Shown in pieces: positions 33,030 through 55,504 of a stretch of DNA of 64,000 bases. The position numbers and the translations under genes are program-made. The first letter of the stretch is position 1. Each line of letters opens with the position of its first letter. The DNA lies in assembly GCF_031769215.1 (NCBI RefSeq), contig NW_026782932.1, positions 186,001 through 250,000 of the forward strand, read 5' to 3'. The DNA is from Ylistrum balloti. Lineage: Eukaryota. The notes beneath the pieces are model-generated. The model was not told where the DNA came from and searched no databases. It was given only the letters and a program-made list of their open reading frames with translations.

Positions 33030-36000
33030 ATGGTGCCGACAACACGTTGTGGTTTTCTCATCCTGATTGTAGCACTAGTTGAAGGTAATTTACCATTTCA
33101 TCGTTTAAATTTAGAAAACAACTTGGCACCAATATCACCAAATAACAATCCATTGTCGTAATTGGAAAAAAATGTGTTTGATTTGATTTTACATGGCTTG
33201 AGAGACGGGGATGACTAGGGTTGTTAAAATGACGTTGTACATCCAATTTTGCGATTTCAAAACGCAAACTCTACGCGGTGATATTTTTTCGATCAATACA
33301 CTTTCTTATACTTTATGTATATTGTATGTAAAATGTCATGATATTCTAGCGCGCGTGTGAAATTTATGTGACCGTATTTCCACGTTAACAGTATATATAG
33401 ATATATAATGAAAGTTGTCTGTTCAGAAGGTTCTACATTAAATATCAGTAGACCACACTATAACAAGGATTATGAAGTCTTCCAAATGGGGTCTTCTTCT
33501 TCTTATTATTATTATAATCATTATTCCCGCGACACTAGTTTCAGAAATCGTCCGTTCGATTGAAACGACACTTTGCACGAGCATAGATGGTAGTGCAGAG
33601 TTGTTCATTCTGCGATTCTTTTTTCCGACATCAAACATGGCGGCCAAAGCCTGTGATTGGTTAAAGCGTAATAGTCTATAACTAAAACACTGTTTGTCAG
33701 ATTTAAATGAAACTTGATGTGAATATTGATGACCTTGTCAATTGTTTTAAAAATCCAAGATGGCCACCACAGAAAGTAAACTTTAAATGTTTTCCAGTTT
33801 GGATGAAAATTTAACAGGTGTGGTCTTATACAAGGAACACAACGACGCAATCAGTTTTAATAACAAAAATGTTTGTTCAACTTTGAAACTGTGATGATGT
33901 TAATGGTGTGTGTCTAGGGTCTTGCCTGCGTTGATAATCAATTGATGCTATCTATTGTCAGGGTCGTCTGCAGAAGTCTGCTGACTAGCCACTGGTTTAC
34001 ATCAGTCATGCATGACTGACTCTCTAGTTTAAAGTATGTACATCATGCCGTGTATTAACAAAATATTGTAAGAAAGATAATGTTTTCATCATAGAAGTGA
34101 TTTTATGAAACCCAAGTATATCAGCTTTATAAAAACAATTACCAGAAGCTATGCATTTACTTTAAAGCAATCTTAATCAAATATTGTGAAGAAACACTAC
34201 GTTATCATTATATAATATCAAAGGGTATTTAGATGTACTAATTGATATCAGTCTTTTACATATACGCCTGATGCCCTCTGTTTATTTTAAACAGCGTGGT
34301 GTTATAATAGCAAAGTGTATATAATGTGCAAATTGCTATCAATTTGATATAAATACTTAATACCCCATTTTATTTCAAAGTCTAAATAAAATACTATGTT
34401 ATCCTTAAATAATGTGGTTTAATGAAACCAATTTGATATACAAAAGTACATAATGCCCTTTGGTTATCTTGAACAGCTGTAACAAAATATTGTGAAGCAA
34501 TACTGTGTTATCATTATTCAATGTGGTGTTATATTAAAGTGTATTTGAATGTACTAATTGCAATCAATATGAAAATTGAAAGTACTAAATGCATCCTGTT
34601 TATTTTAAAGTCTTAACAAAATATTTTGAAGTAACACTATGGTATCCTTATATAGCGTGATGTTATTCTACCATTTTTTATTTATATAAGTAAATCGTAT
34701 TGTTCTAGTTGTTATCAGTCTGATCTATGAAAGTACTGTGTACTTTGAATAGTCCTAACAAAATACAGTGAAGCGTTACGACTTTTAGTTACCATCCATT
34801 TTGTCACGTATCTATTGATATAGTATTGTTTTACCTCATGTTATACATTTTCATGTATCTGAGGATCCAATAAACTTGAAACTTGAAACTTATTTTGCTC
34901 TAGTGTAGAAAGGCTCTGCGAAAGCGGGTGTAGTTTTGGGACTTGTGTAACGGTTTCCGTTACAGTTAGATATTGTTACGATTGACATGGTGTTGTCTAT
35001 CTAGATTGGTTTTAATTTAAATTGTTCTGCTAATATTACTTCTCGATCGGTTGTTTCAGTTAATGGCGAATGTCCAGATGGTTTCATCAAACATAACACG
35101 TCTTGCTACGACATTCCTCACGTGAAAGCAGACTGGTCTCAGGCAACGGTAATCACTTATCATAGATGCTATAGGACTTTAAATTCACAATGAAACGTGA
35201 AAGTGTATGGAGTTGGATATGGCGTAGAGAGTTGGAGTATGGTGTAGATTACAAAACGTCTGACATGGAGAGTTGGAGTATGTTGTAGATAACAAAACGT
35301 CTGACATGGAGAGTTGAAGTATGTTGTAGATAACAAAACGTCAGACATGGAGAGTTGGAGTATGGTGTAGATAACAAAACGTCTGACATGGAGAGTTGAA
35401 GTATGTTGTAGATAACAAAACGTCTGACATTGAGAGTTGGAGTGTGGTATAGATAACAAAACGTCTGACAATAGAAGCAACCTTGTACTAAAACTGACCA
35501 CCATTGTATCGGTGCATACGATCACATTTTTTATATTCAGAGAAAATCCAATCAAATTTTCAGTGGAGCATTTTCCTGTATCAATATTCAGGTTATGATT
35601 CATCACAGGACTCTAACGTATCTAATTTTACGTTTTGTAAAGTGCTATTGACTGTCTTTAGGACTCTCTTGTTTATACGGGTTAACTTATATGTTGTCCT
35701 TATTTAATCACCAGGTAGTTTGTAATGAACTCAATGGTCACCTACTGGAGCTCGATGACGCGGCAGAAGAAAGCTTCGTACATGGTTTCCTTTCTTTGCA
35801 CTGGAGTGAGTAGAACATGTTAACATTTTCTATCATAAAACAATTAAGTTTATTAAAGACAAACAATAAAACAAGGAAAAATAATCATCAAAAGAAATTT
35901 GAAAAAAAGAGAAATGGGAAGAACGGACCAAAAGGGACATCTACTCCACCTACTGAACCAGTACGAGCGATTACTTCCCAATATCAGTAACCCTTGGTCA

Positions 36001-39000
36001 AGTATTGATAGCTACCTGGGATTATCCATTATCTCGGATACCAGAATTGTTTTCCTATGAAGATAATTTGTGAATTTTTGGCTCAATATCAGCCAAATGT
36101 AATGTGAAAAGAAATGGGAACATGCTTTATATAAAAAAAATTCGTAATTAAGTAGGGAGTGAATTTCATCTAAGAGATTATATAATGATAGTATGTATGT
36201 TTCAACATAACATAGCAGGATCAGAGAAAGTAGAAACCCTGAAACCTTGGTAAGTCATGCATCAGTTTCAGGGAGGGAACGAAATAGTGGCGCAGTGGTA
36301 ACGCACTCGCCATTCACCTAGCCGTCCGGGAACGGACGTGAAAAGGTTAGGGATCACCTGCAATTGCGAAACAAGTTATTTCAACTTATACTAATCACTC
36401 TTGTATGCCCCGATGTAAAGATATGATATTGAAATAAGAGACATGTGTTGAATAATCTAATACCGACTAAAACATTTTGATACAAGAGACGTTTCCAATC
36501 TCTAAGTAATCTACATATGTGTTTCCTGTGTGTATCTTTTCAAGGAATGGTATGTTTAAACGTGTCATTTGGTGAACGAGGAAAAATCTCCTGGAGGGGA
36601 CATACATTTTTTACGTAAAAGAGGAGAAATTGTGTGGCATGGATTTTTTTCTAAATACAATGACAACTGAAATCACAAGTTCTTTATGAATGCACATGTA
36701 CAAATAGAAAAAGCAAAACAGGACAATAATAGTGTGTATTGAATCATGTAAGTAGTAGCACACTTTCTATTGGAGCTTATTTCACACCTTTGGAAGTGAC
36801 TGTTTAGGTCAAACTTTGGGAAGTATACGAATGGAAAAGGACAAAGAATAATACACAAATCATATCTGTTATTTAGATAACATTAAAGTAAATATCATTC
36901 AATTACCGACGAAGTTTATTTTTTGAGTGAAACTATTTGTATAAAACTGACATTGGAACTATGATTTTCAATTTGACTCGGAACACATTTTATATCGCTT
37001 TACTGGAAATATTTCAATGTCAATCATTTTGAACGAAAGTCAGCATCAAATATATTTATTTTTCATTGATAGAAGAGGCAGAAAGCCTAATTACATATGA
37101 TTAAAGGAGTGAGCCTTAGTTCATCGTTTCTAAAATCCATCGTGAATAGATAACAAACTTTTGTGCTTGTTTAAACAATTACAAATCTTTTTTTTATTCA
37201 TCAGATACAGATACTCAATAATTGATGTGACATATCAATGTATGTCTGTTGTATCATACATTAAAGAATATCCTTGAAAACAATCCTGTTATATTGTTAA
37301 ATGATAGTGTCCATATTCTGTTAGAATTATATTTCATTGAGTTCTCTTTAAACTCAACAAAGCTTATCATTCATGTCAATTGATGTACCTTTTTCTCCAT
37401 ATTCGTTTTCTTGATTTTCAAATCATTATATTTTGTAGGACCTTCAACTTTGGTATTAAACTTCAGCGAATTACTACGATGGCTTTGTATGGTCAATGAT
37501 AGCTAACTTTTTCATAGTATCACATTCCCTGTAACTGTCATTTGCTTCAGAAGCCTACAACCCGCCCGAATTCTGGATCGCCGGAAATGACATTTTAGTT
37601 GAAGGTACCTGGGAGTGGGCATCGGGGAAACCAGTAACCTATTCGAATTGGGATGACGGCGAGCCTAACAACGGAGGAAACGACGATAATAACGAACATT
37701 GCATGGAAATGTCACAGAGAGATCAATGGAAGTGGCACGATCAGGAATGTGAAGAAGATCGTTATTTCGTATGTGAGGTTCCGTAAGTATCTTGTAAGAA
37801 GTGGGGCATATTTCATGTAAAGGAATCCGGACTAAAAGGAGGGACATATCTTATGTAAGGTACTCCGTTAAGTATATATAGCATAAGAGATTCCGTACTA
37901 GAAGTGGAGACATATTTCATATAAGAGATTCCGTACTAGAAATCGGGACAAGATTAATATAAGAGATTCCGTACTAGGAGTGTGAACATCTTTTATATAG
38001 GAGATTCCGTACTAGGAGAGTGAACATGTTTTATATAAGAGATTCCGTACTAGAAGTGGAGACATATTTCATAGAAGAGATTCCGTACTCGAAATCGGGA
38101 CATGATTAATATAAGAGATTCTGTACTAGGAGTGGGGACATGTTTCATAAAGATATCCCTTACTAGAAGTGGAGACATATTTCTTAGAAGAGATTCCGTA
38201 CTAGAAATCGGGACATGATTGATATAAGAGATTCCGTACTAGGAGTGGGGACATGTTTCATAAAGAGATCCCGTACTAGAAGTGGAGACATATTTCATAG
38301 AAGAGATTCCGTACTAGGAGTGTGAACATGTTTCATATAAGAGATTCCGCACTAGGTGTGTGAACATGTTTTATATAAGAGATTCCGCACTAGGTGTGTG
38401 AACATGTTTTATATAAGAGATTCCGCACTAGGTGTGTGAACATGTCTTATATAGGAGATTCCGTACTAGGAATGTGAACATGTTTTATATAGGAGATTCC
38501 GTACTAGGAGTGTGAACATGTTTTATATAAGAGATTCCGTACTAGGAGTGTGAACATGTTTTATATAAGAGATTCCGTACTAAGAGTGTGAACATGTTTT
38601 ATATAGGAGATTCCGTACTAGGAATGTAAACATGTTTTATATAAGAGATTCCGTACTAGGAGTGTGAACATGTTTCATAAAGAGATCACGTACTAGAAGT
38701 GGAGACATATTTCATAGAAGAGATTCCGTACTCGAAATCGGGACATGATTAATATAAGAGATTCCGTACTAGGAGTGGGGACATGTTTCATAAAGAGATC
38801 CCGTACTAGAAGTGGAGACATATTTCATAGAAAGATTCCGTACTAGGAGTGTGAACATGTTTTATATAGGAGATTCCGTACTAGGAGTGTGAACATGTTT
38901 TATATAGGAGATTCCGTACTAGGAGTGTGAACATGTTTTATATAAGAGATTCCGTACTAGGAGTGTGAACATGTCTTATATAGGAGATTCCGTACTAGGA

Positions 39001-40594
39001 GTGTGAACATGTTTTATATAGGAGATTCCGTACTAGGAGTGTGAACATGTCTTATATAGGAGATTCCGTACTAGGAGTGTGAACATGTTTTATATAGGAG
39101 ATTCCGTACTAGGAGTGTGAACATGTTTTATATAGGAGATTCCGTACTAGGAGTGTGAACATGTTTTATATAAGAGATTCCGTACTAGGAGTGTGAACAT
39201 GTCTTATATAGGAGATTCCGTACTAAGAGTGTGAACATGTTTTATATAGGAGATTCCGTACTAGGAGTGTGAACATGTCTTATATAAGAGATTCCGTACT
39301 AGGAGTGTGAACATGTTTTATATAGGAGATTCCGTACTAGGAGTGTGAACATGTTTTATATAAGAGATTCCGTACTAGGAATATGAACATGTTTTATATA
39401 GGAGATTCCGAACTAGGAGTGTGAACATGTCTTATATAGGAGATTCTGTACTAGGAATGTGAACATGTTTTATATAGAAGATTCCGAACTAGGAGTGTGA
39501 ACATGTTTTATATAAAAGATTCCGTACAAGAAGTGGGAACATATTTTATATTAGCGATCCCGTACAAGAAGTGGGGACATATTTTATATAAGGGATCCCG
39601 TAATAATATGTTTGGTTTTATTAGCGGAGACGTGTCTCAAATAAGAAATTTCTTACTAATGTAGCCATGAGCATGTGTTCGCAATTTGGTTCAAAACTGA
39701 TATATCAAATCTTATTTGCCTCATATTTTTGCCGTTGAAGAGAAGGAATCGTATTATGTAATTATTTATCAAGTAGAATTCACAGGTTAAATATTCACCA
39801 AAATAAATAAGACAGAGGTGAAAAACAATTGTCATCTTTCAGTCCCCTAAATTATTGAAGGAAAGCACATATGTGGAAAATATATAAAATCCTTAGCGTA
39901 AAGTATGGGAAATTAAAGTTCAGTCAAAAATACATTACATTCAGTATTGCCAAAAGTTGCTTTAGTTCCGAACCTGACCATACAAACATGTGTTTCTGTC
40001 AATTGCGAATTTAAATGGAATATCTTATTTAGAAAAAAAATATGTATGTACGATTTCATACGAAAACATAAACATAATGATTTGTTATGTAAATGAAGGG
40101 ACACATACTGTGTCGCCTGTAAATGTTTATTGTGATTATTTTGATATCAAGTTATTCATCAGAAATAAGAAACCCAGTGTATACTGAACCAGTTAGTGTC
40201 TCAGAAATACCTCTGTTATATTGGTTTGGTTGTATATTGCTAATCTTTCTAGTAACAGATGTTCTTTAAGGATGGTCTCCATATAGGTGAAAAATGTTCG
40301 TGCTAACCTCCATAAAGTGTTATCACACTGAAGAATACTGTCGTTTACGATGACATGGTAATTAGTTCAACCATTGAATAATAGGAATAGGAATTGTATG
40401 TTTATAAAACTGATGAAATAATTTATTAATTAGTACTTCATGTTTGTCAGTATTTTTGGTTTACTATCGAAATTATACGAAGGACACTTTTCGATGCAAA
40501 TTCAAAATGACATACAGCATAGCAAAAAATCCTATACATTTGTTTTGTTTACAGGGTTACAGACGCCATTGGTGGCTTCGCACCAATAGGCTAA
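33030..40594 (+). CDS. C-type lectin gene B1 (EPN/WHD). Exons 33030-33084, 35060-35148, 35715-35805, 37551-37782, 40555-40594; ~168 aa
   Basis: Signal peptide MVPTTRCGFLILIVALVEG; CPDGF..SCY, WSQA, FWIAGND, EGTWEW, NWDDGEPNN, WHD, FVCE. Exon 5 VTDAIGGFAPIG stop is conserved in B2. Confidence 0.9.
34800..34892 (+). mobile_element. Possible 3' end of a LINE-like element
   Basis: AATAAA followed by a short repeated (acttgaa) tail, inside an ~860-bp segment present only in unit 1. Confidence 0.3.
35225..35470. repeat. 41-bp minisatellite in B1 intron 2, ~6 units
   Basis: Unit ggagagttggagtatggtgtagataacaaaacgtctgacat. Confidence 0.92.
36283..36362 (+). mobile_element. Paralogous SINE head in B1 intron 3, B-box deleted
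   Basis: A-box TGGCGCAGTGG at 36288; the segment holding the B-box in the B2 copy is missing. Confidence 0.55.
37885..39600. repeat. 38-bp minisatellite in B1 intron 4, ~45 units
   Basis: Unit gagattccgtactaggagtgtgaacatgttttatataa. Confidence 0.95.
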
Positions 40595-42234
40595 TCATCG
40601 AGATGTCACGTGCTTTCATGCCTCGCGCTCACTGTGATGTACCCAGAGTTTGTTATATTAAACAATACATGGTATTTGGAATCAAATGTTGTTGTGTTGT
40701 AGTTGATGTTTTAGTTGCATGAATTTAAAATGGAAGTATGTTTTGACTTGGATTCCAAATTGTGGATAAAATCCGTTTTAGAATAAACGGTAATCCTCTT
40801 TTGGTTAACTTGTTTTTTATTTACAACGCACCTGAATTGATCAAAATAACTACAAAGCCCATGGCAAATCACTTTTAGATATATTCGTGACGTTTCGTCT
40901 TTAAATATCGCATTAAGCCACCAGAATTAGGAATCAAGGACACGGCGATCTCTACGTCAGCCGATTATATTTCTCTACAACGAAACCAACAAGGATATTT
41001 TCCCATTCTTTTGATAAACGCGATAAATTCAAATTTGCTATTGTGAATTATATATTTCTGGATAGCAATAGTCCTGCATTATCAATCTATGATATTCACA
41101 TGTCACAGTTGATTCGATATTCTAGGGATTGTATCTTGATTTCCGTGCAAGATGTCGGCAAGTGACAGATGAATTCACAATGCCAAGTTTCTAGAGATGC
41201 ATGTTGATGAAAACTATAGGTAAGTTTGTACGGCTGTTTCAATGAGCTCATCAAGAAGTATTCTATTTCTTCTTGTGTAATGAAGTTGGGCATGGACGAT
41301 GCTCGTTAGTTTGGTCTTTAATTCCGTTGTTTGTATACATTGTTTTCACGTGAGAACATGACATTATTTACTTGGATTGTCCAAGATTTACACGGCGGCT
41401 GTCGTCGATGAAGCCGAAGACGCTTACCCTTACGGATCAGCTGGTCTTATCGTCCTTGAATTTTTCCAGGTGTATGAATTTAAACGTACTTTCCCACAAT
41501 ACATTTTATCCGGAATGTGAATAGATTTTATTCCAGTCCGTAAAGGTTATCTGTCTGCATTGTGCTAACAATCAACAGGGACGTTCAATTGCTACACGAG
41601 AAAACTAGCCCTTGTGCGCTGTCAGATATACATTAGAGTCCTGTCGTTTAAATGTTTTTATCTTACTGACTTTCTGTTGGTGCATCCGATCTAAACAAGC
41701 TCGCATATAAGTGGTCTGATAGTTTTGTACTAATGGCAAATAGTGCCATTTATGGTATGTACCGTTATCGTGTCAGATATCGTATAACTGGACTGGTATA
41801 TCTGAGTAGTCATTCAATAGAACAAAAATATTCCTGTCTGAATTTACACAACAAAAATGTTCGAACCGTTTCATCATGTACATGTAATACAAAAAACTGA
41901 TATAAAGCATAGTTGATGGCCAACGTTTGTTGAATGATATACATGTGGTATAAAGTTCCACCGAGTCTGACCTTACAGTCATGAAGTATTGATGAACCAT
42001 GATGATAATGATTAACATAGAACCTAATGAGGTATACTTGTACATTGTACTTATTATTCAGCAAACAATGCATTAGATGAGGTATTACAATTCATGATAG
42101 GTAAAATTCGCTGCTTTTCTACATAAAATTCTCAATCACGATTCGAAATAGTTTAATTTACAGATTAATATAATAAGAAATCTTAATGATGATTGGAAAA
42201 CAAGCTTGAAGCTTATATCAAGTCCTCTCAAGTT

Positions 42235-42600
42235 AAAACTGTAGGGTTACATAGTGCCGAACACAAGGTAAAACTGAACGGCTACAGTGTGCCGAACACA
42301 AGTGCCAAACACAAGTGCCGAACACAAGATAAAACTGAACGGTTACAGTGTGCAGAACACAAGTGCCGAATACAAGGTAAAACTGTGATGTTACAGTGTG
42401 CCGAACACAAGTTAAAACTGTACGGTTACAGTGTGCGGAATACAAGTTAAAACTGTACGGTTACAGTGTGCCGAACACAAGTTAAAACTGTACGGTTACA
42501 GTGTGCCGAATACAAGATAAAACTGTACGGTTACAGTTTGCCGAGCACAAGTTAAAACTGTACGGTAACAGTGTGCCGAACACAAGTTAAAACTGTACGG
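42235..42600. repeat. 35-bp minisatellite, ~10 units, cut by the duplication junction
   Basis: Unit acagtgtgccgaacacaagttaaaactgtacggtt. Confidence 0.93.
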
Positions 42601-43066
42601 CGGTAACGACACAGACTATGACGAAGAACACTGCGCGGAAATGTCGCAGAAAAATAACTGGCAGTGGAATGACAACGGATGTGAGGAGGAGAAGCATTTC
42701 GTTTGTGAAATGATGTGAGCAAAGTAGAAAACGTAACGAAAGGGACACGATTCCCTATGTACCTATTTGTATTTATGATTGTTTTGTTTTTTATTAAAGG
42801 AATGAGCTATCTCGCGTACTGACCTAATGAAACTATCATTGTTGAATACCAGTTAAATAAAAGATTTATGAACAAAATGAGCATTCAAACTCAGAACCGA
42901 TACAACTTTGGTAAAATATTAACCCAAAACGCGAATAGGACGACTAGATGTTCCATCATGGTCAGCTATGACTTTTTAACACGTGTTCTAATACAGGGCC
43001 GAAGAGAAAATAACATTAAAGCCACCGTTACAAACTGTGATACTATGTTTCAGTGACGAAGAATAG
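42599..43066 (+). pseudogene. 5'-truncated copy of CTL gene A (3' half of exon 4, intron 4, exon 5)
   Basis: 42599-42714 matches 27742-27857 with 4 substitutions. No acceptor or upstream exons; fused directly to the 35-bp minisatellite. Confidence 0.85.
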
Positions 43067-43744
43067 TGAATGACCACAACTTTGTTACATGTGACCTACC
43101 ATTAAGGTATACAAATTTTGTACTGATCTGAATAGCACAACAATGTATACTTAACATTTTTAATATCTGAGGCACTTTAACGGAATTTCTCTTCTTTGAT
43201 ATCACACATCACACACTATTAGATATTTCTTATGCCAGCTTAAGACACACGAGTATAACTAATAATTTCAGTATAAGCCCTCAAGTACATCGCCTTCTTT
43301 ATTATACAGTATACGACATCCATGAATTGTATTCTCTATAATATCAGCATGTGACAAAGATGTTAGATATTAATTGGTATGTATAGTTCTTAATAATTGA
43401 TTTGCATAATCTTTGTCATATTACCTTATGGTACATTGTAACCCACTGCATAATATTATATTAGCCATATTAGCATATGACAAACGTTTATTTCTCACTA
43501 GATATAAATATCATATGACGCAATTGAATTATGTTCCTTTTGTTAATACTTTGCTTTATTTTACAGGACCATGCTAATCAAGATCAAAATACAATTTGCA
43601 ATTCAGCATGCTACAAATTATATAGAAAATAAAATTAATCCTTCATATCTTTGTTCTTGACTTTATTATATGAAAAGATCCTTGCACCTGAAATAGTCAT
43701 TTAATGACCATACAAATAAGTTACTTTCCTTCCATTCACTGACC

Positions 43745-46700
43745 ATGGAGGTAGGTTACCTTTACCTTCCCTTAGTTTATAACTGGCCATGAAGGTAGAT
43801 TACCTTTACCTTCCTATAGTTAATAACTGGCCATGAAGGTAGGTTACCTTTACCTTCCCATAGTTTATAACTGGCTATGAAGGTAGGTTACCTTTACCTT
43901 CCCATAGTTAATAACTGGCCATGAAGGTAGGTTACTTTTATCTTTCCATAGTTAATAACTGGCCGTGAAGTTAGGTTACCTTTACCTTCCCATAGTTAAT
44001 AACTGGCCATGAAGGTAGGTTACCTTTACCTTCCCATAGTTAATTACTGGCAATGGAGGTAGGTTACCTTTACCTTCCCATAGTTAATAACTGGTCATGA
44101 AGGTAGGTTATTCGTACCTTCCCATAGTTAATAACTGGCAATGAGGTAGGTCACCTTTACCTTCTCATAGTTAATAACTGGCCATGAAGGTAGGTAACCT
44201 TTACCTTCCCATAGTTAATAACTGGCAATGAGGTAGATTACCTTTACCTTCCCATAGATAATAACTGACCGTGAAGGTAAGTAACCTTTACCTTCCCATA
44301 GTTAATAACTGGTCAAGAAAGTAGGTTACTCGTACCTTCCCATAGTTAATAACTGGCCGTGAAGGTAGGTTACCTTAACCTTCCCATAGTTAATAACTGG
44401 CAATGGAGGTAGGTTACCTTTACCTTCCCCTAGTTAATATTTGACCATGAAGGTAGATTATCTTTACCTTCCCATAGTTCCATAGTTAATAATTGGCCAT
44501 GAAGGTATGTTACCTTTACCTTCACATAGTTAATAACTGGCCATGGAGTATTTGACCATGAAGGTAGATTACCCTTACCTTCCCATAGTTAATAACTGGC
44601 CATGAAGGTATGTTACCTTTACCTTCACATAGTTAATAACTTGCCATGAAGGTATGTTACTTTTATCTTCCCATAGTTAATAACTGGCCATGATAGTAGA
44701 TTACTTTTACTTTCCCCTAGTTAATATTTGACCATTAAGGTAGGTTACCTTTACCTTCCCATAGTTAATGACTGACCATGAAGTTAGGTTACCTTTACCT
44801 TCCGGAAGTTAATAATTGGTCATGAAGGTATGTTACCTTTACCTTCCCATAGTTAATAACTGGTCATGAAGATAGGTTACTCGTACCTTCCCATAGTTAA
44901 TAACTGGCAATGGAGGTAGGTTACCTTTACCTTCCTATAGTTAATAACTGGCCATGAAGGTAGATTACCTTTACTTCCCCATAGTTAATAACTGGCCGTG
45001 AAGTTAGGTTACCTTTACCTTCCCATAGTTAATAACTGGCCATGAAGGTAGGTTACCTTTACCTTCCCATAGTTAATTACTGGCAATGGAGGTAGGTTAC
45101 CTTTACCTTCCCATAGTTAATAACTGGTCATGAAGGTAGGTTATTCGTACCTTCCGATAGTTAATAACTGGCAATGAGGTAGGTCACCTTTACCTTCTCA
45201 TAGTTAATAACTGGCCATGAAGGTAGGTAACATTTACCTTCCCATAGTTAATAACTGGCCATGAGGTAGATTACCTTTACCTTCCCATAGATAATAACTG
45301 ACCGTGAAGGTAAGTAACCTTTACCTTCCCATAGTTAATAACTGGTCATGAAAGTAGGTTACTCGTACCTTCCCATAGTTAATAACTGGCCGTGAAGGTA
45401 GGTTACCTTAACCTTCCCATAGTTAATAACTGGCAATGGAGGTAGGTTACCTTTACCTTCCGAAAGTTAATAATTGGTCAAGAAGGTAGATTACCCTTAC
45501 CTTCCCATAGTTAATAACTGGCCATGAAGGTAGGTAACCTTTACCTTCCCATAGTTAATAACTGGCCATGGAGGTAGATTACCTTTACCTTCCCCTAGTT
45601 AATATTTGACCATGAAGGTAGATTACCTTTACCTTCCCATAGTTAATAACTGGCCATGAAGGTAGAGTACCTTTATCTTCCCATAGTTAATAACTGGCCA
45701 TGAAGTTAGATTACCTTTACTTCCCCATAGTTAATAACTGACCATGAAGGTAGATTACCTTTACTTTCCCCTAGGTAATAACTGACCATGAAGGTAGATT
45801 AACTTTTCCTTCCCATAGTTAATGACTGACCATGAAGTTAGGTTACCTTTACCTTCCCATAGTTAATAACTGGCCATGAAGGTAGGTTACCTTTACTTCC
45901 CCATAGTTAATAACTGGCCATGAAGGTAGGTTACCTTTACCTTCCCATAGTTAATAACTGGCCATGAAGGTATGTTACTTTTATCTTCCCATAGTTAATA
46001 ACTGGCCATGAAGGGAGGTTACTCGTACCTTCCCATAGTTAATAACTGGCCGTGAAGGTAGGTTACCTTAACCTTCCCATAGTTAATAACTGGCAATGGA
46101 GGTAGGTTACCTTTACCTTCCGAAAGTTAATAATTGGTCAAGAAGGTAGATTACCCTTACCTTCCCATAGTTAATAACTGGCCATGAAGGTAGGTAACCT
46201 TTACCTTCCCATAGTTAATAACTGGCCATGGAGGTAGATTACCTTTACCTTCCCCTAGTTAATATTTGACCATGAAGGTAGATTATCTTTACCTTCCCAT
46301 AGTTCCATAGTTAATAACTGGCCATGAAGGTAGATTACCTTTACTTCCCCATAGTTAATAACTGGCCATGAAGGTAGGTTACCTTTACCTTCCCATAGTT
46401 AATAACTGACCACGAAGGTAGATTACCTTTACTTTCCCCTAGTTAATAACTGACCATGAAGGTAGATTACCTTTACCTTCCCATAGTTAATAACTGGCCA
46501 TGAAGGTAGAGTACCTTTATCTTCCCATAGTTAATAACTGGCCATGAAGTTAGATTACCTTTACTTCCCCATAGTTAATAACTGACCATGAAGGTAGATT
46601 ACCTTTACTTTCCCCTAGGTAATAACAGACCATGAAGGTAGATTAACTTTTCCTTCCCATAGTTAATGACTGACCATGAAGTTAGGTTACCTTTACCTTC

Positions 46701-47113
46701 CCATAGTTAATAACTGGCCATGAAGGTAGGTTACCTTTACTTCCCCATAGTTAATAACTGGCCATGAAGGTAGGTTACCTTTACCTTCCCATAGTTAATA
46801 ACTGGCCATGAAGGTATGTTACTTTTATCTTCCCATAGTTAATAACTGGCCATGAAGGGAGGTTACTCGTACCTTCCCATAGTTAGTAACTGGCCATGGA
46901 GGTAGATTACCTTTACTTTCCCCTAGTTAATATTTGACCATGAAGGTAGGTTACCTTTACCTTCCCATAGTTAATAACTGGCCATGAAGGTAGAGGACCT
47001 TTACCTTCCCATAGTTAATAACTGGTCATGAAGTTAGATTACCTTTACTTCCCCATAGTTAATAACTGGCCATGAAGGTAGGTTACCTTTACCTTCCCAT
47101 AGTTAATAACTGG
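43745..47113. repeat. 44-bp minisatellite, ~76 units, upstream of B2
   Basis: Unit aaggtaggttacctttaccttcccatagttaataactggccatg. Confidence 0.96.
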
Positions 47114-48633
47114 ATATTTGACAAGAAAGGTCAGTTTCTTCCTCTCCCATAAAATGTTTGTCACTTTTCCCTCAAGTTGTTTCTAACTAAACATTAAGGT
47201 AAGAAAAAAAGTTATTTATTCATCATTCGCGTACCTTTATTTCTCTTTTTTTCTACAATGGAATTCAATCAGGAAAACTTTCCACCAAAAAGATTACCAG
47301 GTCTCTAGGCATATAAACATGTTCTATGTATTCTTGACATCAGCCACTTTTATGTCAACATATGATACTTTTACATATTACATTTGCTTAACTTTTTTCC
47401 AAAGCCAAATGTTTATTTCAGCTGAATAGCTAGATTAATGTCAATGAGTCGACCTTTATCAATTACATCACTACCTAGATTACGTTGAGACTACCTAAAG
47501 ATAACATCAGTAAGACAACGATCAGTTCTGGACAACCATGGAGTAAAGGTTAATAAGGACATTAGGGACATTTAATGTCATACAGCATCCATCGTTATCT
47601 TTTACTTTGGCAAATAAAGAAAAGTATTTGGAGAAAACAAACATTAAATCGCTACAAGACAGCTTAAACTTATATTGTATTATCAGTCGCTTTTGTGAAA
47701 TGTTTCATCTTAATCCTTTTTCGGTTATTGTCTCTTTCTGTTACCTTTGCCATTTAACTTGTTTATGAATAGAGTTGAAAATGATATCGTCAAGTTAAGC
47801 AATGTTAAATTGTTATCTGATATTTCTGCTTAAAATTCCATGCGAGAAAACGACACAATTTAATACACTACAAAAGGTATTTTAAAATAATCAGCCAATA
47901 TTGTTGTGATTATGCATTGATTGTAAGCTACGGAACTGCTCTAAAATAAGATAACCGCCAAAACCGGTACGTTTACGGGATCCCTTAATATACATTGTGT
48001 TTGAAAGGTACAACTCGCTTTCCATTATCTATAATGATGACATGTAACGATCACACGATGACATCATTCCAGATGAGTTGCTGAGGCCTGTTTCAAAGTT
48101 AATGGTGAAACATTAAGAGTTAAACAAAAAACTAGTGGAACTAAAAAGTGTTTTGACGTTTTCCGAAATCGATTAATGGTTGATATCATTCCTAACTTAA
48201 TTTAAAATATCAAATTTGATTAACCCTAAAACTTTCTTTTTTATTATGGACAGATTGGTGTTGATGAAAAAGTCAAGTTACATGTACATTTTGTAAATGA
48301 AATCGTTCCAGTCATCAAAAACGAGACAGAGAAATGGACACTAAGCAGAATCGAAGTAGGTTATCTAATGTATCACGTGTTAACGCCTATGTAACACTAG
48401 TCGAAAATGATAAACAATTTCCTTTTAAAATATGGTCTTATTTACTGTGCACATAGTATAACGAATGATGTTTTAGCAATTAGTTGGAGTTTCTTCGTTA
48501 ATGAGCATAAACCCTTGATAAGCTTCGGAATTTGTGCCAAGTCGATTGGTTATTGACACCAAGATTAAATGCCTATACAACAATATAGAAATATGTCGGT
48601 TTCCAACCTTCACAAACAAGATAAGAAGTAAAC

Positions 48634-51600
48634 ATGGCGTCGACAACACGTTGTGGTATTCTCATCCTGATTGTAGCACTAGTTGAAGGTAATCGTTTAA
48701 ATTTAGAAAACAACTTGGCACCAATATCACCAAATAACAATCCATTGTCGTGATTGGGAAAAAAAATGTGTTTGATTTGATTTTTCATGGCTTGAGAGAC
48801 GGGATGACTAGATGACTAGGGCTGTTTAAATGACGCTGTACATCCAATTTTGCGATTTCAAAACGCAAACTCTACCCGGTGATATTTTTTGCGATCAATA
48901 CACTTTCTTATATTTCATGTATATTGTATGTAATATGTCATGATATTCTAGCGCGCGTGTGAAATTTATGTGATCGTATTTTCACGTTAACAGTATATAT
49001 AGATATATAATGAAAGCTGTCTGTTCAGAAGGTTCTACATTAAATATCAGTAGACCACACTATAACAAGGGTTATGAAGTCTTCCAAATGGGGTCTTCTT
49101 CTTCTTATTAATATTATAATCATTATTCCCGCGACACTAGTTTCAGAAATCGTCCGTTCGATTGAAACGACACTTTGCACGAGCATAGATGGTAGTGCAG
49201 AGTTGTTCATTCTGCGATTCTTTTTTCCGACATCAAACATGGCGGCCAGAGCCTGTGATTGGTTAAAGCGTAACAGTCTATAACTAAAACACTGTTTGTC
49301 AGATTTAAATGAAACTTGGTGTGAATATTGATGACCATATCATTTTATTTTTTAAAAATCCAAGATGGCCACCACAGAAAGTAAACTTTAAATGTTTTCC
49401 AGTTTTGATGAAAATTTAACAGGTGTAGTCTTAAACAAGGAACACAACGAAACAATCAGTTTTAATAACAAAAATGTTTGTTAAACTTTGAAACTTTGAT
49501 ATTGTTAATGGTGTGTGTCAAGGGTCTTGCCTGCGTTGATAATCAATTGATGTTATCTATTGTCAGTGTCGTCTACAAGAGTCTGGTGACTGGCCACTGG
49601 TTTACATCAGTCATGCATGACTGACTCTCTAGTTTAAAGTATGTACATCATGCCGTGTAGAAAGGTCTTGCGAAAGCGGGTGTAGTTTTGGGACTTTTGG
49701 AACGGTTTCCGTTACAGTTAGAACTTATTACGATTGACATTGTGTTGTCTATCTAGATTGGTTTACATTGGAATTGTTCTGAAATAAATTGCTAATATTA
49801 CTTCTCTATCAGTTGTTTCAGTTAATGGTGATTGTCCAGATGGTTTCATGAAACATAATTTGTCTTGCTACGACATTCCTCACGTGAAAGCAGACTGGTC
49901 TCAGGCAACGGTAATCACTTATCATATGTGCTATCTGAAAATCATGTAAGGACTTTAAATTCACAATGAAACGTGAAAGTGTATGGAGTTGGATATGGCG
50001 TAGAGAGTTGGAGTATGTTGTAGATAACAAAACGTCAGACATGGAGAGTTGGAGTATGGTGTAGATAACAAAACGTCTGACATGGAGAGTTGGAGTATGT
50101 TGTAGATAACAAAACGTCAGACATGGAGAGTTGGAGTATGGTGTAGATAACAAAACGTCTGACATGGAGAGTTGGAGTATGGTGTAGATAACAAAACGTC
50201 TGACATGTAGAGTTGAAGTATGGTGTAGATAACAACGTCTGACATTGAGAGTTGGAGTGTGGTTCAGTTAACGAAACGTCTGGGATGGAGAGTTGGAGTG
50301 TGGTGTAGATAACAAAACGTCTGACAATAGAAGCAACCATGTACTAAAACTGACCACCATTGTATCGGTGCGTACGAACACATTTTCTATATTCAGAGAA
50401 AATCCAATCAAATTTTCAGTGGAGCATTTTCCTGTATCAATATTAAGTTACAGGACTCTAACGTATCTAATTTTACGTTTTGTAAAGTGCTATTGACTGT
50501 CTTTAGGACTCTCTTGTTTATACGGGTTAACTTTTATTTTGTCCTTACTTAATCACCAGGTAGTTTGTAATGAACTCAATGGTCACCTACTGGAGCTCGA
50601 TGACGCGGCAGAAGAAAGCTTCGTACATGGTTTCCTTTCTTTGCACTGGAGTGAGTAGAACATGTTAACATTTTCTATCATAAAACAATTAAGTTTATTA
50701 AAGACAAACAATAAAACAAGGAAAAATAATCATCAAAAGAAATTTGAAAAAAAAGAGAAATGGGAAGAAAAGATCAAAGTTAATCAATAGCTCGTCTGTA
50801 ATACGTCCCGACTGGAAATGACGCAATAACCTACATACTGCCGAATCTTCACCTCGAACGGACCAAAAGGGACATCTACTGCACCTGCTGAACCAGTACG
50901 AGTGACTACTTCCCAATATCAGTAACCCATGGTCAAGTATTGATAGCTACCTGGGATTATCCATTATCTCGGATACCTGAATTGTTTTCCTATGAAGATA
51001 ATTTGTGAATTTTTGGCTCAATATCAGCCAAATGTAATGTGAAAAGAAATGGGGACCTACTTTATTTCAGAAATTTCGTAATTAAGTAGGGAGTGAATTT
51101 CATCTAAGAGATTATATAGTGATAGTATGTATGTTTCAACATAACATAGCATAATCAGAGAAAGTAGAAACCCTGAAACCTTGGTAAGTCATGCACCAGT
51201 TTGTAGTCTGGTGGCACAGTGGTTAACTCCCTTGCCTTTCACCTAGCCGTCCGCAGTTCGATTCCCGGAACGGACGTGAAAAGTTAAGGGATCACCTGCA
51301 ATTGCGAAACAAGTTATTTCAACTTATACTAATCAATCTTGTATGCCGGATGTAAATGCATGTGTTGAATAATCAAATACCGTCTAAAAATATTTTCTAT
51401 GTAATCTACGTATGTGTTTCCTATGTGTTTCAAGGAATAGTATGTTTAAACGTGTCATTTGGTAAACCAGGAAAAATCTGACATACATTTTTTACGCAAA
51501 AGAGGAGAATTCTTCTTGCATGGATTTTTTTCTAAATACAATGACAACTGAAATCACAAGTTGTTATGAATGCACATGTACAAATAGAAAAATGAAAACA

Positions 51601-54056
51601 GGACAATGATATTGTGTATTGAATCATGTAAGTAGTAGCACACTTTCTATTGGAGCTTATTTCACACATTTGGAAGTGACTGTTTAGGTCAAACTTTGGG
51701 AAGTATACGAATGGAAAAGGACAAAGAATAATACACAAATAATATCTGTTATTTAAATAACATTAAAGTAAATATCATTCAATTACCGACGAAGTTTATT
51801 TTTTGAGTGAAAATATTTGTATAAAACTGACATTGGAACTATGATTTTCAATTTGACTCGGAACACATTTTATATCCCTATACTGGAAATATTTCAATGT
51901 CAATCATTTTGAATGAAAGTCAGCATCAAACATATTTATTTTTCATTGATAGAAGTGGCAGAAAGCCTAATTACATATGATTAAAGGAGTGAGCCTTAGT
52001 TCATCGTTTCTAAAATCCATCGTGAATAGATAACAAACTTTTGTGCTTGTTTAAACAATTACAAATCTTTTTTTATTCATCAGATACAGATACTCAATAA
52101 TTGATGTGACATATCAATATATGTCTGTTGTATCATACATCAAAGAATATCCTTAAAACAATCCTGTTATATTGTTAAATGATAGTGTCCATATTCTGTT
52201 AGAATTATATTTCATTGAGTTCTCTTTAAACTCAACAAAGCTTATCATTCATGTCAATTGATGTACCTTTTTCTCCGAAGTTGCCGATTTTCTACTTTTT
52301 AGCGTTGATTTTTTCCCAAGGGGAAACGGTATGCATGTAATTATGAAGTGTTTTAAAAGCAATTTACATATTCGTTTTCTTGATTTTCAAATCATTATGT
52401 TTACTGTAGGACCTTCAACTTTGGTATTAAACTTCAGCTGTTGCACGATGGCTTTGTATGGTCAATGATAGCTAACTTTTTCATCGTATCACATTCCCTG
52501 TAACTGTCATTTGCTTCAGAAGCCTACAACCCGCCCGATTTCTGGATCGCTGGAAATGACATTTTAGTTGAGGGTAACTGGGAGTGGGCATCGGGGAAAG
52601 CAATAACCTATTCGAATTGGGATGACGGGCAGCCCGACAACGGAGGAGACCACGATCATAACGAGCATTGCATGGAGATGTCACAGGGAGATCACTGGAA
52701 GTGGAACGATCAGGAATGTGAAGAAGAGCGTTATTTCGTATGTGAGGTTCCGTAAGTATCTTGTAAGAAGTGGGGCATATTTCATGTAAAGGAATCCGGA
52801 CTAAAAGGAGGGACATATCTTATGTAAGGTATTCCGTTAAGTATATATAGCTTAAGAAGCAAGGGTAAATTTCATATAGATAGAGATTCCATACTAGGAG
52901 TGGGGACATGTTTTATATAAGAGATTCCGTACTAGAAGTGGGGATATGTTTCATATAAGAGATTCCGTACAAGAAGTGGGGACATGTTTCATATAAGAGA
53001 TTCCGTACTAGAAGTGACGACATGTTCCATGTAAGAGATTTCTGAGTAAAGCACCAGGAGTGGGGAATAATATAATATATTTGGCTTTATTAGCGGAGAC
53101 ATGTTTCAAATAAGAAATTTCTTACACCTGTAGTCTTGAGTATATATTCGCAATTTGGTTCAAAACCGATATATCAAATCTTATTTGCCTCATATTTATG
53201 CCGTTGAAGAGAAGGAATTGTATTACATAATTCTTTATCAAGTAGAATTCACAGGTTAAATATTAATAAAAAGAAATAAGACAGAGGTGAAAAACAACTG
53301 TCATCTTTAAATTACCAAAATTATGTCAGGAAAGCACATATGTGGAAAAGATATGAAATCCTTAGCGTCGAGTATGGGAAATTAAAGTTCAGTCAAAAAT
53401 GCGTTACATTCAGTATTGTCAACAGTTGTTTTAGTCCCGAATCTAATCATACAACATTCCTGTCAATTGTGAATTTAAATGGCATATCTTATTTAGAAAA
53501 AAATCTGCATCTGCAATTTCATATGAAAACATAAACATAATGACTTGATATGTAACTGAAGGGACACATACTGTGTCGGCTGTAAAGTTTGTTGTGATTA
53601 TTTTGATATCAAGTTATTCATCAGAAATAAGAAACCCAGTGTATACTGAACCAGTTAGTGTCTCAGAAATACCTGTTATATTGGTTTGGTTGTATATTGC
53701 TAATCTTTCTAGTAACAGATGTTCTTTAAGGATGGTCTCCATATAGGTGAAAAATGTTCGTGCTAACCTCAATAAAGTGTTATCACACTGAAGAATGATG
53801 TCGTTTACGATGACATGGTAATTAGTTCAACCATTGAATAATAGGAATAGGAATTGTATGTTTATAAAACTGATGAAATAATTTATTAATTAGTACTTCA
53901 TGTTTATCAGTATTTTGGTTTACTATCGAAATTATACGAAGGACACTTTTCGATGCAAATTCAAAATGACATACAGCATAGCAAAAAACCTATACATTTG
54001 TTTTGTCTGAATATAGGGTTACAGACACCATTGGTGGTTTCGCACCAATAGGCTAA
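48634..54056 (+). CDS. C-type lectin gene B2 (QPD/WND). Exons 48634-48688, 49822-49910, 50560-50650, 52520-52751, 54017-54056; ~168 aa
   Basis: Paralog of B1 with identical exon sizes and intact frame; NWDDGQPDN, WND; exon 5 VTDTIGGFAPIG stop. Confidence 0.9.
49995..50325. repeat. 41-bp minisatellite in B2 intron 2, ~8 units
   Basis: Same unit as 35225-35470. Confidence 0.92.
51205..51300 (+). mobile_element. tRNA-derived SINE head in B2 intron 3
   Basis: A-box TGGCACAGTGG at 51212 and B-box GTTCGATTCCC at 51256; no complete cloverleaf. Confidence 0.65.
52880..53045. repeat. 38-bp minisatellite in B2 intron 4, ~4 units
   Basis: Paralogous position to 37885-39600. Confidence 0.85.
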
Positions 54057-55504
54057 TCATCGAGATGTCACGTGCTTTCTTGCCTCGCGCTCACTGTGAT
54101 GTACCCAGAACTTGTTATATTAAATAATACATGGTATTTGAAATCAAATGTTGTTGTGTTGTAGTTGATGTTATAGTTGCACGAATTTAAAACGGAAGTA
54201 TGTTTTGACTTGGATTCCAAATTGTGGATAAAATCCGTTTTAGAATAAACGGTAATCCTCTTTTGGTTAACTTGTTTTTTATTTACTATGCGCCTGAATT
54301 GACCAAACTACAAAGCCAATGGAAAATCACTTTTAGATATATTGATGACGTTTCGTCTTTAAATATCGCATTAAGCCACCGGAATTAGGAATCAAGGACA
54401 CGGAGATCTCTACGTCAGCCGATTATATTTCTCTACAACGAAACCAACAATATTTTCCCACCATTCTCTTTGTTAAACGCGATAATTTCAATTTTGCTAT
54501 TGTGAATTTTACATTTCTGGATAGCAACATTAATGCATTATCAATGTGTGATATTCACAAGTCACAGTTGATTCGATATTCTAGGGATTGCATCTTGATT
54601 TTCATGCAATATGTCGGCAACTGACAGATGAATTCTCAATGCCAGGTTTCTAGAGATACATGTTGATGAAAACTATAGGTAAGTTTTAATGATCTTATCA
54701 AGAAATATTCTATTTCTTGAACTTTACCAGGTGTATGAATTTAAACGTTCTTTCCCACAATACATTTTATCCGGAATGTGAATAGATTTTAAACCAGTTC
54801 GTAAAGGTTATCTGTCTGCATTGTGCTAACAATCAACAGGGACGTTCAGTTGCTACACGAGAAAACTAGCCCCTGTGCGCTGTCAGATATACATTCGAGT
54901 CCTGTCGTTTGAATCTTTTTTTATCTTACTGACTTTCTAATGGTGCATCCGATCTAAACAAGCTCACTTATAAGTGGTCTAATAGTTATGTACTAATGAC
55001 AAATGGTGGCATTTATGGTATGTACCGTTATCGTGTCAGATATCGTATAATTGGGCTGGTATATCTGAATAGTCACTCAATAGAACAAAAATATTCCTGT
55101 CTGAATTTACACAACAAAAATGCTCCAACCGTTTCATCATGTACATGTAATACAAAAAACTGATATAAAGCATAGTTGATGGCCAACGTTTGTTGAATGA
55201 TATACATGTGGTATAAAGTTCCACCGAGTCTGACCTTACAGTCATGAAGTATTGATGATCCGTGGTGATAATGATTAACATAGAACCTAATGAGGTATAC
55301 TTGTACATTGTACTTATTATTCAGCAAACAATGCATTAGATGACATATTACAGTTCATGATAGGTAAAATTCGCTGCATTTTTGCATAAAATTCTCGAAT
55401 CACGATTCGTAATATTTTTATTTACAGATTATAAATATAATGAGAAATCTTAATGATAATTGGAAAACAAGCTTGAAGCTTATATCAAGTCCTCTCAAGT
55501 TATA

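What the first reader, a model, noticed from the sequence alone, without database searches (positions are those of the whole stretch)
37551..52755. Recent paralogs B1 and B2 have switched sugar-specificity motifs: EPN/WHD versus QPD/WND
Seen: the genes have identical exon sizes and an identical 91-nt exon 3. Exon 4 differs at 19 of 232 nt by hand count, 13 of them amino-acid changing. These include GAG>CAG and AAC>GAC (EPN vs QPD) and CAC>AAC (WHD vs WND), plus changes in the adjacent loop. Known: EPN to QPD is the classic engineered change that converts mannose-binding protein to galactose preference, and QPD/WND is the galactose-type signature. Inference: a natural mannose-type versus galactose-type switch caught shortly after duplication, a clean case of neofunctionalisation with both frames intact.
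Basis: partly seen in the sequence, partly recalled or inferred. Interest (0 to 1): 0.82.

Follow-up and report, generated by a model that had tools for sequence, protein, structure and literature searches.

The report
Scallop lectin twins with swapped sugar motifs
Two neighbouring, 88%-identical secreted C-type lectin genes of the saucer scallop really do carry the mannose-type (EPN) and galactose-type (QPD) sugar-site signatures. The EPN copy is the changed one, but a real change in sugar preference is untested, and such motif swaps between lectin duplicates are already known.

Summary
The window is Ylistrum balloti contig JAUZWB010000633.1. B1 and B2 are the adjacent RefSeq genes XP_060084595.1 and XP_060084596.1 ("perlucin-like", 168 aa). 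Both have five exons of 55/89/91/232/40 nt. Exon 3 is identical. Exon 4 differs at 19 nt, 13 of them amino-acid changing, and these include EPN/WHD versus QPD/WND.

The genes lie in a ~15 kb tandem duplication whose junction fuses a satellite cut mid-unit to the middle of an exon of the upstream lectin gene. Four resequenced individuals each carry two exon-4 forms. Paralogy is therefore likely (about 0.9) but not proven.

Mizuhopecten yessoensis has a single B gene in the same gene order, with QPD/WND. So B2 keeps the ancestral site and B1 is derived. Five of B1's six own amino-acid changes fall in the 27-residue EPN-to-WND segment (p≈0.001).

No dN/dS exceeds 1 (0.58 overall, 0.42 in exon 4). 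Expression is untested. WHD replaces a Ca2+/sugar ligand. In bivalves these motifs predict specificity poorly. A crayfish EPS/QPS duplicate pair with mannose versus galactose binding is already published.

Verdict: a real, tidy new member of a known kind. Neofunctionalisation is plausible, not shown.

The parts
33030..40594 (+). Gene B1 (XP_060084595.1, perlucin-like, 168 aa). Exons are 33030-33084, 35060-35148, 35715-35805, 37551-37782 and 40555-40594.
   Evidence: The spliced translation is identical to P0003. The gene span matches NCBI's. Pfam Lectin_C E=5.6e-21.
48634..54056 (+). Gene B2 (XP_060084596.1, perlucin-like, 168 aa). Exons are 48634-48688, 49822-49910, 50560-50650, 52520-52751 and 54017-54056.
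   Evidence: The spliced translation is identical to P0004. The gene span matches NCBI's. Pfam Lectin_C E=3.5e-19.
37661..37669 (+). B1 codons 116-118, GAG CCT AAC = EPN. This state is derived.
   Evidence: The outgroup has CAG CCT GAC.
37733..37741 (+). B1 codons 140-142, TGG CAC GAT = WHD. This state is derived.
   Evidence: The outgroup and the in-window paralogs A and C all have WND.
52630..52638 (+). B2 codons 116-118, CAG CCC GAC = QPD. This state is ancestral.
52702..52710 (+). B2 codons 140-142, TGG AAC GAT = WND. This state is ancestral.
27742..42598 (+). Tandem duplication unit 1. It runs from the middle of exon 4 of gene A, through B1, to a 35-nt satellite that is cut mid-unit.
   Evidence: Self-BLAST and the junction sequence.
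42599..57104 (+). Tandem duplication unit 2. It holds the dead 3' fragment of gene A, a 44-nt satellite, B2 and the full 35-nt satellite.
42599..43196 (+). 3' fragment of gene A: the last 38 codons of its exon 4 plus the downstream flank. It marks the duplication junction.
   Evidence: 95.7% identical to 27742-28340. tblastn hit. No gene is annotated over it.
25063..30035 (+). Gene A, the upstream C-type lectin (192 aa), with motif HPD/WND.
60882..64000 (+). Gene C, the downstream C-type lectin (191 aa). It runs off the window. The EPN/QPD tripeptide is deleted and WND is kept.
37883..39602 (.). 38-nt satellite inside intron 4 of B1, 45 copies. B2 has 4 copies at 52882-53040.

Best explanation
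B1 and B2 are true tandem paralogs of a small secreted single-domain C-type lectin. They were made by a ~15 kb duplication in the Ylistrum lineage. The protein has a signal peptide, a long-form six-cysteine carbohydrate-recognition domain and a 12-residue tail.

Shown: B2 keeps the ancestral galactose-type Ca2+-site 2 (Q116-P-D118, E127, W-N141-D142). On the B1 branch, five single-base substitutions (Q116E, D118N, D122N, H123D, N141H) rebuilt that site and its loop into EPN ... WHD, while the fold residues stayed untouched. Both genes have been kept open by selection.

Inferred: in C-type lectins the EPN and QPD residues hold the Ca2+ ion that binds two adjacent sugar hydroxyls. They also set the hydrogen-bond donor/acceptor pattern that favours equatorial 3-/4-OH sugars (Man, GlcNAc, Fuc) or galactose-type sugars. 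B1 has therefore most likely shifted or broadened its ligand range relative to B2. This would be ordinary diversification of a bivalve pattern-recognition or mucosal lectin repertoire. A strict galactose-to-mannose switch is only one possible outcome, because WHD removes the canonical Asn ligand.
For: Gene models equal the RefSeq proteins. The CTLD family match, the six cysteines and the site alignment to EPN/QPD and WND of solved CTLDs hold.

Duplication: direct repeats of 27742-42598 and 42599-57104 have 5.4-6.7% non-coding mismatch. At the junction a 35-nt satellite, cut mid-unit, is fused to the middle of exon 4 of gene A with about 2 nt of microhomology and no N. Each of four DNA runs from two studies and two organism labels holds two contigs over 37573-37855. 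One has 7 differences from B1 and the other 20-21, at about equal depth.

Outgroup: M. yessoensis has one B gene between the A and C orthologs, and it carries QPD/WND. After polarising, 5 of 6 B1-branch amino-acid changes lie within residues 116-142, binomial p=0.001.

Selection: 0 indels in the CDS against 4.7 expected. dN/dS was about 0.07-0.11 before duplication and 0.47 after, over exons 2-4. Distances to the outgroup are equal, 51 and 52 of 231 nt.

EPN/WHD also occurs in razor-clam lectins ScCL and SgCTL-1, and ScCL is reported as Ca2+-dependent (PMC12842671).
Against: No binding data and no RNA evidence exist. dN/dS is below 1 in every partition. The N:S contrast before and after duplication is only p=0.07-0.18 on raw counts. 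The clustering of all 19 exon-4 differences is not significant (p=0.11). The 15.6% divergence of the loop tract (p=0.005-0.009) was delimited after looking. His at the WND Asn position may weaken Ca2+ and sugar binding. Bivalve EPN lectins such as GYL and AiCTL-3 do not behave as mannose lectins (PMC12842671). The read data are contigs: the baseline depth is unknown, and I could not read the letters at the motif codons in the other individuals.
Confidence: 0.55

Rival explanations
1. This is relaxed constraint after duplication. B1's sugar site is drifting or decaying, WHD has already damaged the Ca2+ site, and the resemblance to a canonical EPN motif carries no functional meaning.
For: dN/dS rose from about 0.1 to about 0.5 after duplication without exceeding 1. 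In exon 4, dN (0.072) is about the intron divergence. N141H removes a canonical ligand. Expression is unverified.
Against: Neutral drift should scatter changes, yet 5 of 6 B1-branch changes hit the 27-residue site segment (p=0.001). Q-to-E plus D-to-N gives exactly the alternative canonical pair: about 1 in 56 by my count of single-base non-synonymous neighbours of CAG and GAC, if both codons change at random. Net charge is conserved across the five changes. The frame is intact with no indels (P=0.009). In the four runs, the contig close to B1 has no gaps over 283 nt. EPN/WHD recurs in lectins reported as active.
Confidence: 0.22
2. B1 and B2 are two divergent haplotypes (alleles) of one locus that the assembler laid in tandem.
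For: A linearised haplotype bubble would also give two direct units. The depth of each exon-4 contig (9-19) is about half that of the flanking collapsed contigs (18-27), and baseline single-copy depth was not measurable. Bivalves are highly heterozygous.
Against: The junction joins non-homologous DNA, a satellite cut mid-unit to mid-exon sequence, with about 2 nt of microhomology. It has no gap and lies in the middle of a 393 kb contig. Divergence between the units is 5.4-6.7% plus 71 indel events and very different satellite lengths. The reference differs from the resequenced individuals by only about 0-3%. All four individuals, under two organism labels, carry both exon-4 forms at about 1:1. 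That has probability of at most 0.06 for a two-allele locus at p=0.5.
Confidence: 0.08
3. The EPN...WHD tract was pasted into B1 by ectopic gene conversion from another EPN-type lectin gene, rather than built by point substitutions.
For: Divergence along the units is a mosaic (chi-square p=1.7e-13), so conversion does operate here. The tract 37660-37736 holds 12 of the 19 differences, including 4 synonymous ones.
Against: Only 6 of those 12 differences are on the B1 branch, 5 non-synonymous and 1 synonymous. That is far fewer than a diverged donor would import into 77 nt. Neither in-window paralog has EPN or WHD. The word search found no other close paralog in the Y. balloti proteome in the 65-206 aa range.
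Confidence: 0.05

Closest known systems
PcLec-EPS / PcLec-QPS of the crayfish Procambarus clarkii (PMC9638144)
   Same: These are two C-type lectins derived from a gene duplication. They differ mainly in the one exon that carries the E-versus-Q motif. The recombinant proteins are reported to prefer D-mannose and D-galactose respectively.
   Different: The crayfish motifs are EPS and QPS, and only the first residue is swapped. The scallop pair swaps both motif residues and also changes WND to WHD. The crayfish pair has binding and expression data and the scallop pair has none. The two cases are independent events in different phyla.
Engineered QPD mutants of rat mannose-binding protein A (Drickamer 1992; Iobst and Drickamer 1994; Kolatkar and Weis 1996; cited from my own knowledge). 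The PDB hit list includes MBP-A entries such as 1afa, 1afb, 1afd, 1bch and 1bcj, which I recall, unchecked here, to be these mutants.
   Same: The same two positions of Ca2+ site 2 are exchanged (E/Q and N/D) while the rest of the fold is kept.
   Different: The natural change runs the other way, from QPD to EPN. It comes with three further loop changes and N-to-H in WND. The engineered protein needed an added Trp and a Gly-rich loop for good galactose selectivity, and B2 has no such aromatic residue.
Bivalve EPN/WHD lectins ScCL (Sinonovacula constricta) and SgCTL-1 (Solen grandis), listed in the motif table of review PMC12842671
   Same: They show the same EPN plus WHD pairing in single-domain bivalve C-type lectins. 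ScCL is listed as Ca2+-dependent.
   Different: They are distant genes in razor clams with no known QPD/WND twin, and their sugar specificity is listed as not determined.
Perlucin and other mollusc single-CRD secreted C-type lectins (the NCBI name for B1, B2 and the Mizuhopecten ortholog)
   Same: They are small secreted proteins consisting of one long-form C-type lectin domain.
   Different: The name was given by automatic similarity. A role in shell formation, as for perlucin, was not tested here.

Membership tests
C-type lectin-like domain (Pfam PF00059) | Profile match above the curated cut-off of 22.6 bits | tested here: met
   B1 scores 75.7 bits and B2 70.0 bits, covering profile positions 3-106 of 107. 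Exon 4 alone scores 52 and 46 bits.
C-type lectin-like domain (Pfam PF00059) | Long-form disulfide framework of six cysteines, plus a WIGL-type core motif | tested here: met
   C23, C34, C51, C129, C145 and C153, and W87-I-A-G-N-D, are invariant in B1, B2 and the Mizuhopecten ortholog.
Ca2+-dependent carbohydrate-recognition CTLD (site 2: EPN/QPD, Glu, WND) | All five site-2 ligand positions occupied by Glu/Gln, Asn/Asp, Glu, Asn, Asp | tested here: met
   This applies to B2, which has Q116, D118, E127, N141 and D142. They align to EPN/QPD, E and WND of mannose-receptor-family CTLDs.
Mannose-type CRD (EPN + WND) | EPN tripeptide together with the Asn-Asp of WND | tested here: not met
   B1 has EPN but WHD: the Asn ligand is His141. 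B1 therefore works like an EPN-type site at most, and is not a canonical member.
Galactose-type CRD (QPD + WND + apolar stacking residue) | An aromatic residue next to the site that stacks on galactose (Trp in ASGPR and in QPDWG-MBP; from my own knowledge) | tested here: inconclusive
   The B2 loop between QPD and E127 is N-G-G-D-H-D-H-N, with no Trp, Tyr or Phe. His123 or His125 could serve, but the structure models were unusable at pLDDT 38-40.
Ca2+-dependent carbohydrate-recognition CTLD | Ca2+-dependent, sugar-inhibitable binding | not testable with these tools
   This needs recombinant protein.
Tandem segmental duplication | Two direct units joined head to tail at a breakpoint junction, present in independent individuals | tested here: inconclusive
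   The units and the junction are in the assembly. Two exon-4 forms are present in all four runs.

The most novel reading that the evidence does not exclude
B1 is an adaptive, naturally occurring re-engineering of a galactose-type lectin site into an EPN-type site. It was achieved by just five charge-balanced point substitutions confined to the binding loop. It includes a WND-to-WHD change that converges on the EPN/WHD lectins of razor clams. Both copies are fixed in the population. The pair would then be a natural counterpart of the classic MBP-A mutagenesis experiment, with every intermediate easy to rebuild and test.
Probability: 0.3. Interest if true: 0.55.

Novelty: new member of a known kind. 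Interest (0 to 1): 0.4.

Why it matters
Bivalves have very large C-type lectin repertoires with highly variable site motifs. How those motifs change, and what the changes do, is mostly inferred from distant comparisons. Here the ancestral state, the direction of change and the full list of steps are known. One branch carries five substitutions, all in the sugar-binding loop, and an intact twin keeps the old site. That makes a compact system for testing whether EPN/QPD and WND/WHD really set specificity in molluscan lectins. It does not reveal a new mechanism or a new kind of gene.

Tried and rejected
1. My first gene model was wrong. It used a start exon at 33472-33589 and the TAA at 37784 as the stop (177 aa). 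The RefSeq proteins and the Mizuhopecten ortholog show the start exon at 33030-33084 and a fifth exon after the GTAAGT donor that overlaps that TAA.

2. AlphaFold2 on B1 and B2 with an eight-row alignment gave pLDDT 39.6 and 37.6. The models were not used, and no fold search was run.

3. No RNA run holds the locus, so expression is untested.

4. Copy number from contig depth is inconclusive. The whole laid stretch lies inside the duplication, and Logan contigs collapse small variants. The rows for the motif codons were cut from the table of differences.

5. Protein word searches with exon 4 alone were limited by the length rule and found only a mis-framed Mizuhopecten model. Searching with that model reached the full-length proteins.

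6. The big representative search was not run. The family is not in doubt, and its 50% clusters would not resolve the orthologs.

7. The clustering test on all 19 exon-4 differences gave p=0.11. Exon 4 against non-coding divergence gave p=0.35. Neither supports exon-wide acceleration.

8. ARAGORN found no tRNA in the high-copy element at 36287-36420.

9. Synonymous changes were polarised with the outgroup, but dS to it is saturated (1.6-2.1). Only the amino-acid polarity is trusted.
Full report
**Where the window comes from**

The window has no N and about 35% G+C. Exon 4 of B1 first found a Mizuhopecten yessoensis lectin. Searching with that protein found two 168-aa "perlucin-like" proteins of Ylistrum balloti, XP_060084595.1 and XP_060084596.1. 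They are encoded side by side on contig JAUZWB010000633.1 of GCA_031769215.1. My spliced translations of B1 and B2 equal these two proteins exactly. The window is therefore saucer-scallop DNA, and NCBI already annotates the two genes as separate loci. Earlier notes of this scan had called the genome a saucer scallop, and I confirmed that here.

**Checking the observation**

- B1 has exons 33030-33084, 35060-35148, 35715-35805, 37551-37782 and 40555-40594.
- B2 has exons 48634-48688, 49822-49910, 50560-50650, 52520-52751 and 54017-54056.
- Exon sizes are 55/89/91/232/40 nt in both genes, and every intron is GT-AG.
- The two genes differ at 3/6/0/19/2 nt per exon, 30 nt in all.
- Exon 3 is identical.
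- Exon 4 has exactly 19 differences, 13 amino-acid changing and 6 silent. They include GAG/CAG and AAC/GAC (EPN versus QPD) and CAC/AAC (WHD versus WND).
- The proteins are 148/168 identical with no gaps.

One detail needs correcting. The TAA after exon 4 overlaps a consensus GTAAGT donor of a phase-2 intron. The gene then continues into a short fifth exon of 12 residues. The Mizuhopecten gene and genes A and C of the cluster are built the same way.

**Surroundings**

The window holds a lectin cluster in the order A (192 aa, HPD/WND), B1, a dead 3' fragment of A, B2, then C (191 aa, tripeptide deleted, WND kept).

B1 and B2 lie in two direct units, 27742-42598 and 42599-57104. Non-coding mismatch between the units is 5.4-6.7%, with 71 indel events. 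Four satellites have very different copy numbers in the two units: 44-nt 2.6 versus 76, 38-nt 45 versus 4, 35-nt about 10 versus 46, and 41-nt 6 versus 8. Divergence along the units is strongly uneven, from 1% to 12% per 300 nt (chi-square p=1.7e-13). This suggests gene conversion since the duplication. Identical exon 3 sits in one of the low-divergence blocks.

**Alleles or paralogs?**

- *The junction.* At 42598/42599 the 35-nt satellite is cut in the middle of a unit and fused to the middle of exon 4 of gene A, with about 2 nt of microhomology. In unit 2 the same satellite runs on to its natural end at 57104. That is a rearrangement breakpoint. It is not the long-overlap join expected of a haplotype artefact. 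It lies in the middle of a gap-free 393 kb contig.
- *Divergence.* The units differ several-fold more than the reference differs from four resequenced individuals, which is about 0-3% per contig.
- *Reads.* Logan contigs of four DNA runs (three samples of one organism label, one of another, two studies) were laid on 33400-37875. Each run has two contigs over 37573-37855. One is 283 nt with 7 differences from B1. The other is 284 nt with 20-21 differences and one gap, close to what B2 would give (18 differences). Depths are about equal: 13/15, 12/15, 19/15 and 9/11.

Fixed "heterozygosity" in all individuals is what paralogs give. For a two-allele locus it has a probability of at most 0.06.

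There are limits. Contigs give no linkage. The baseline depth is unknown, because the whole laid stretch is inside the duplication. The table rows for the motif codons were cut off. I put paralogy at about 0.9.

**Direction of change**

The M. yessoensis locus (L002) has the same gene order: A, an A-like pseudo-exon, one B gene, then C. The duplication is therefore younger than the split between the two scallops.

The single Mizuhopecten B protein has QPD and WND. Using its DNA to polarise the differences gives:

| Branch | Amino-acid changes |
|---|---|
| B1 | T98, E116, N118, N122, D123, H141 |
| B2 | D22, L32 (two steps), A106, I107, H125, G135, H137, E148, and probably D85 |

B2 thus keeps the ancestral site and B1 is the changed copy. 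Five of B1's six changes lie in the 27 residues from EPN to WND, out of about 148 mature residues (binomial p=0.001). For B2 the figure is three of ten (p=0.27). The five B1 changes are all single-base steps and leave the net charge unchanged.

Both copies are equally far from the outgroup, 51 and 52 of 231 nt in exon 4. Neither copy is racing ahead of the other.

**Selection**

- dN/dS between B1 and B2 is 0.58 for the whole gene and 0.42 for exon 4.
- Over exons 2-4 it is 0.47, against 0.07-0.11 for either copy versus Mizuhopecten, where dS is saturated.
- Constraint therefore loosened four- to six-fold after duplication, as is usual. The contrast on raw counts is only p=0.07-0.18.
- Exon 4 as a whole (8.2%) is not more diverged than non-coding DNA (p=0.35).
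- The loop tract 37660-37736 is more diverged: 12/77 against 7/155 in the rest of exon 4 (p=0.009), and p=0.005 against non-coding DNA. I chose that tract after seeing the data.
- The coding sequence has no indel where 4.7 are expected from the introns (P=0.009). The frames have been kept by selection.

Taken together, the site-specific clustering on the B1 branch and the exact arrival at the alternative canonical pair argue for a directed change of the binding site. Formal proof of positive selection is lacking.

**What it is and how it likely works**

Both proteins match Pfam Lectin_C over the full domain. They have the six cysteines of a long-form domain and the W-I-A-G-N-D core. They align with solved mannose-receptor-family, DC-SIGN, collectin and codakine domains, so that residues 116-118 fall on EPN/QPD, E127 on the conserved Glu, and 140-142 on WND. 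An N-terminal hydrophobic stretch serves as a signal peptide, and there is no unpaired cysteine in the mature chain. This points to a soluble secreted lectin.

From established knowledge of this fold (Weis and Drickamer's work on MBP-A), these five residues hold the Ca2+ that ligates two vicinal sugar hydroxyls. Exchanging E/N for Q/D flips the hydrogen-bond pattern from mannose-type to galactose-type sugars. On that basis B2 is a canonical galactose-type site, but it has no obvious aromatic platform. B1 is an EPN-type site in which the Asn of WND is His.

The same EPN/WHD pairing is listed for the razor-clam lectins ScCL (Ca2+-dependent) and SgCTL-1. WHD also occurs in several oyster lectins (PMC12842671). 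WHD is therefore compatible with an active lectin.

The same review warns against reading specificity from the motif. EPN-bearing GYL does not bind mannose, and EPN-bearing AiCTL-3 does not bind mannan and is inhibited equally by mannose and galactose.

My best reading is therefore a shift or broadening of ligand range in B1, with a strict galactose-to-mannose switch as one possible outcome.

**Comparison with what is known**

Motif plasticity among duplicated bivalve C-type lectins is well documented (PMC12842671). A directly parallel case has been published. The crayfish duplicates PcLec-EPS and PcLec-QPS differ mainly in one exon, and their recombinant proteins prefer mannose and galactose respectively (PMC9638144).

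The scallop pair is a new and unusually tidy member of this kind. It swaps both motif residues, and its outgroup, polarity and complete list of steps are known. It is not a new kind of system.

**What failed or was left out**

- Structure prediction gave unusable models, so no fold search was run.
- No RNA runs exist for the locus.
- The costly representative search was not used.

Noticed in passing
window 37780-37788, 52749-52757, 27850-27860, 63488-63496; L002 17318-17330: In every gene of the cluster, and in the Mizuhopecten ortholog, the lectin-domain exon ends at a phase-2 GTAAGT or GTGAGC donor. The second to fourth bases of that donor form an in-frame TAA or TGA. Retaining intron 4 would simply give a protein 12 residues shorter, so two C-terminal forms are possible.
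   Followed up: partly
window 42599-43196: A dead 3' fragment of gene A, made of the last 38 codons of its exon 4 plus flank, lies between B1 and B2. It is 95.7% identical to 27742-28340. It has three amino-acid differences from A and is not annotated as a gene.
   Followed up: yes
window 27598-27855; L002 1602-1859 and 5476-5718: The first residue of the sugar motif also varies in gene A. It is HPD in Ylistrum and NPD in Mizuhopecten. Mizuhopecten also carries its own extra A-like exon-4 copy with an in-frame stop between A and B. This suggests the region duplicates repeatedly and that motif position 1 is a hot spot (Q, E, H, N).
   Followed up: partly
window 63259-63486: Gene C has lost the EPN/QPD tripeptide through a five-residue deletion in the loop. 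It keeps WND and the cysteines. It may be a non-sugar-binding or non-canonical lectin-like domain.
   Followed up: no
window 31042-31157 vs 43738-47113; 37883-39602 vs 52882-53040; 42229-42600 vs 55496-57104; 35227-35470 vs 50003-50326: Four satellites (44, 38, 35 and 41 nt) have expanded or shrunk very differently in the two duplicated units. The 44-nt array has 2.6 versus 76 copies. In unit 2 this array replaces about 2.7 kb that in unit 1 holds the last exon of gene A.
   Followed up: partly
window 36287-36420 and 34050-34902: A very high-copy element in intron 3 has contig depth 22,000-38,000 against about 20 for its neighbours, with many inverted joints. ARAGORN found no tRNA in it. An 853-nt repeated element is inserted in intron 1 of B1 only. 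Contigs that skip it exist in all four runs.
   Followed up: partly
P0001 (OWF40329.1, Mizuhopecten yessoensis): This deposited 118-aa model is mis-framed. Its first 27 residues are exon 2 read in another frame, and exon 3 is skipped. The RefSeq model P0002 (170 aa) is the correct form.
   Followed up: yes
window 7016-7667 and 57402-57797: Two further tandem arrays lie outside the finding. Self-BLAST copy offsets suggest a period of about 40 nt at 7016-7667. Tandem Repeats Finder gives periods of 53 and 156 nt at 57402-57797.
   Followed up: no
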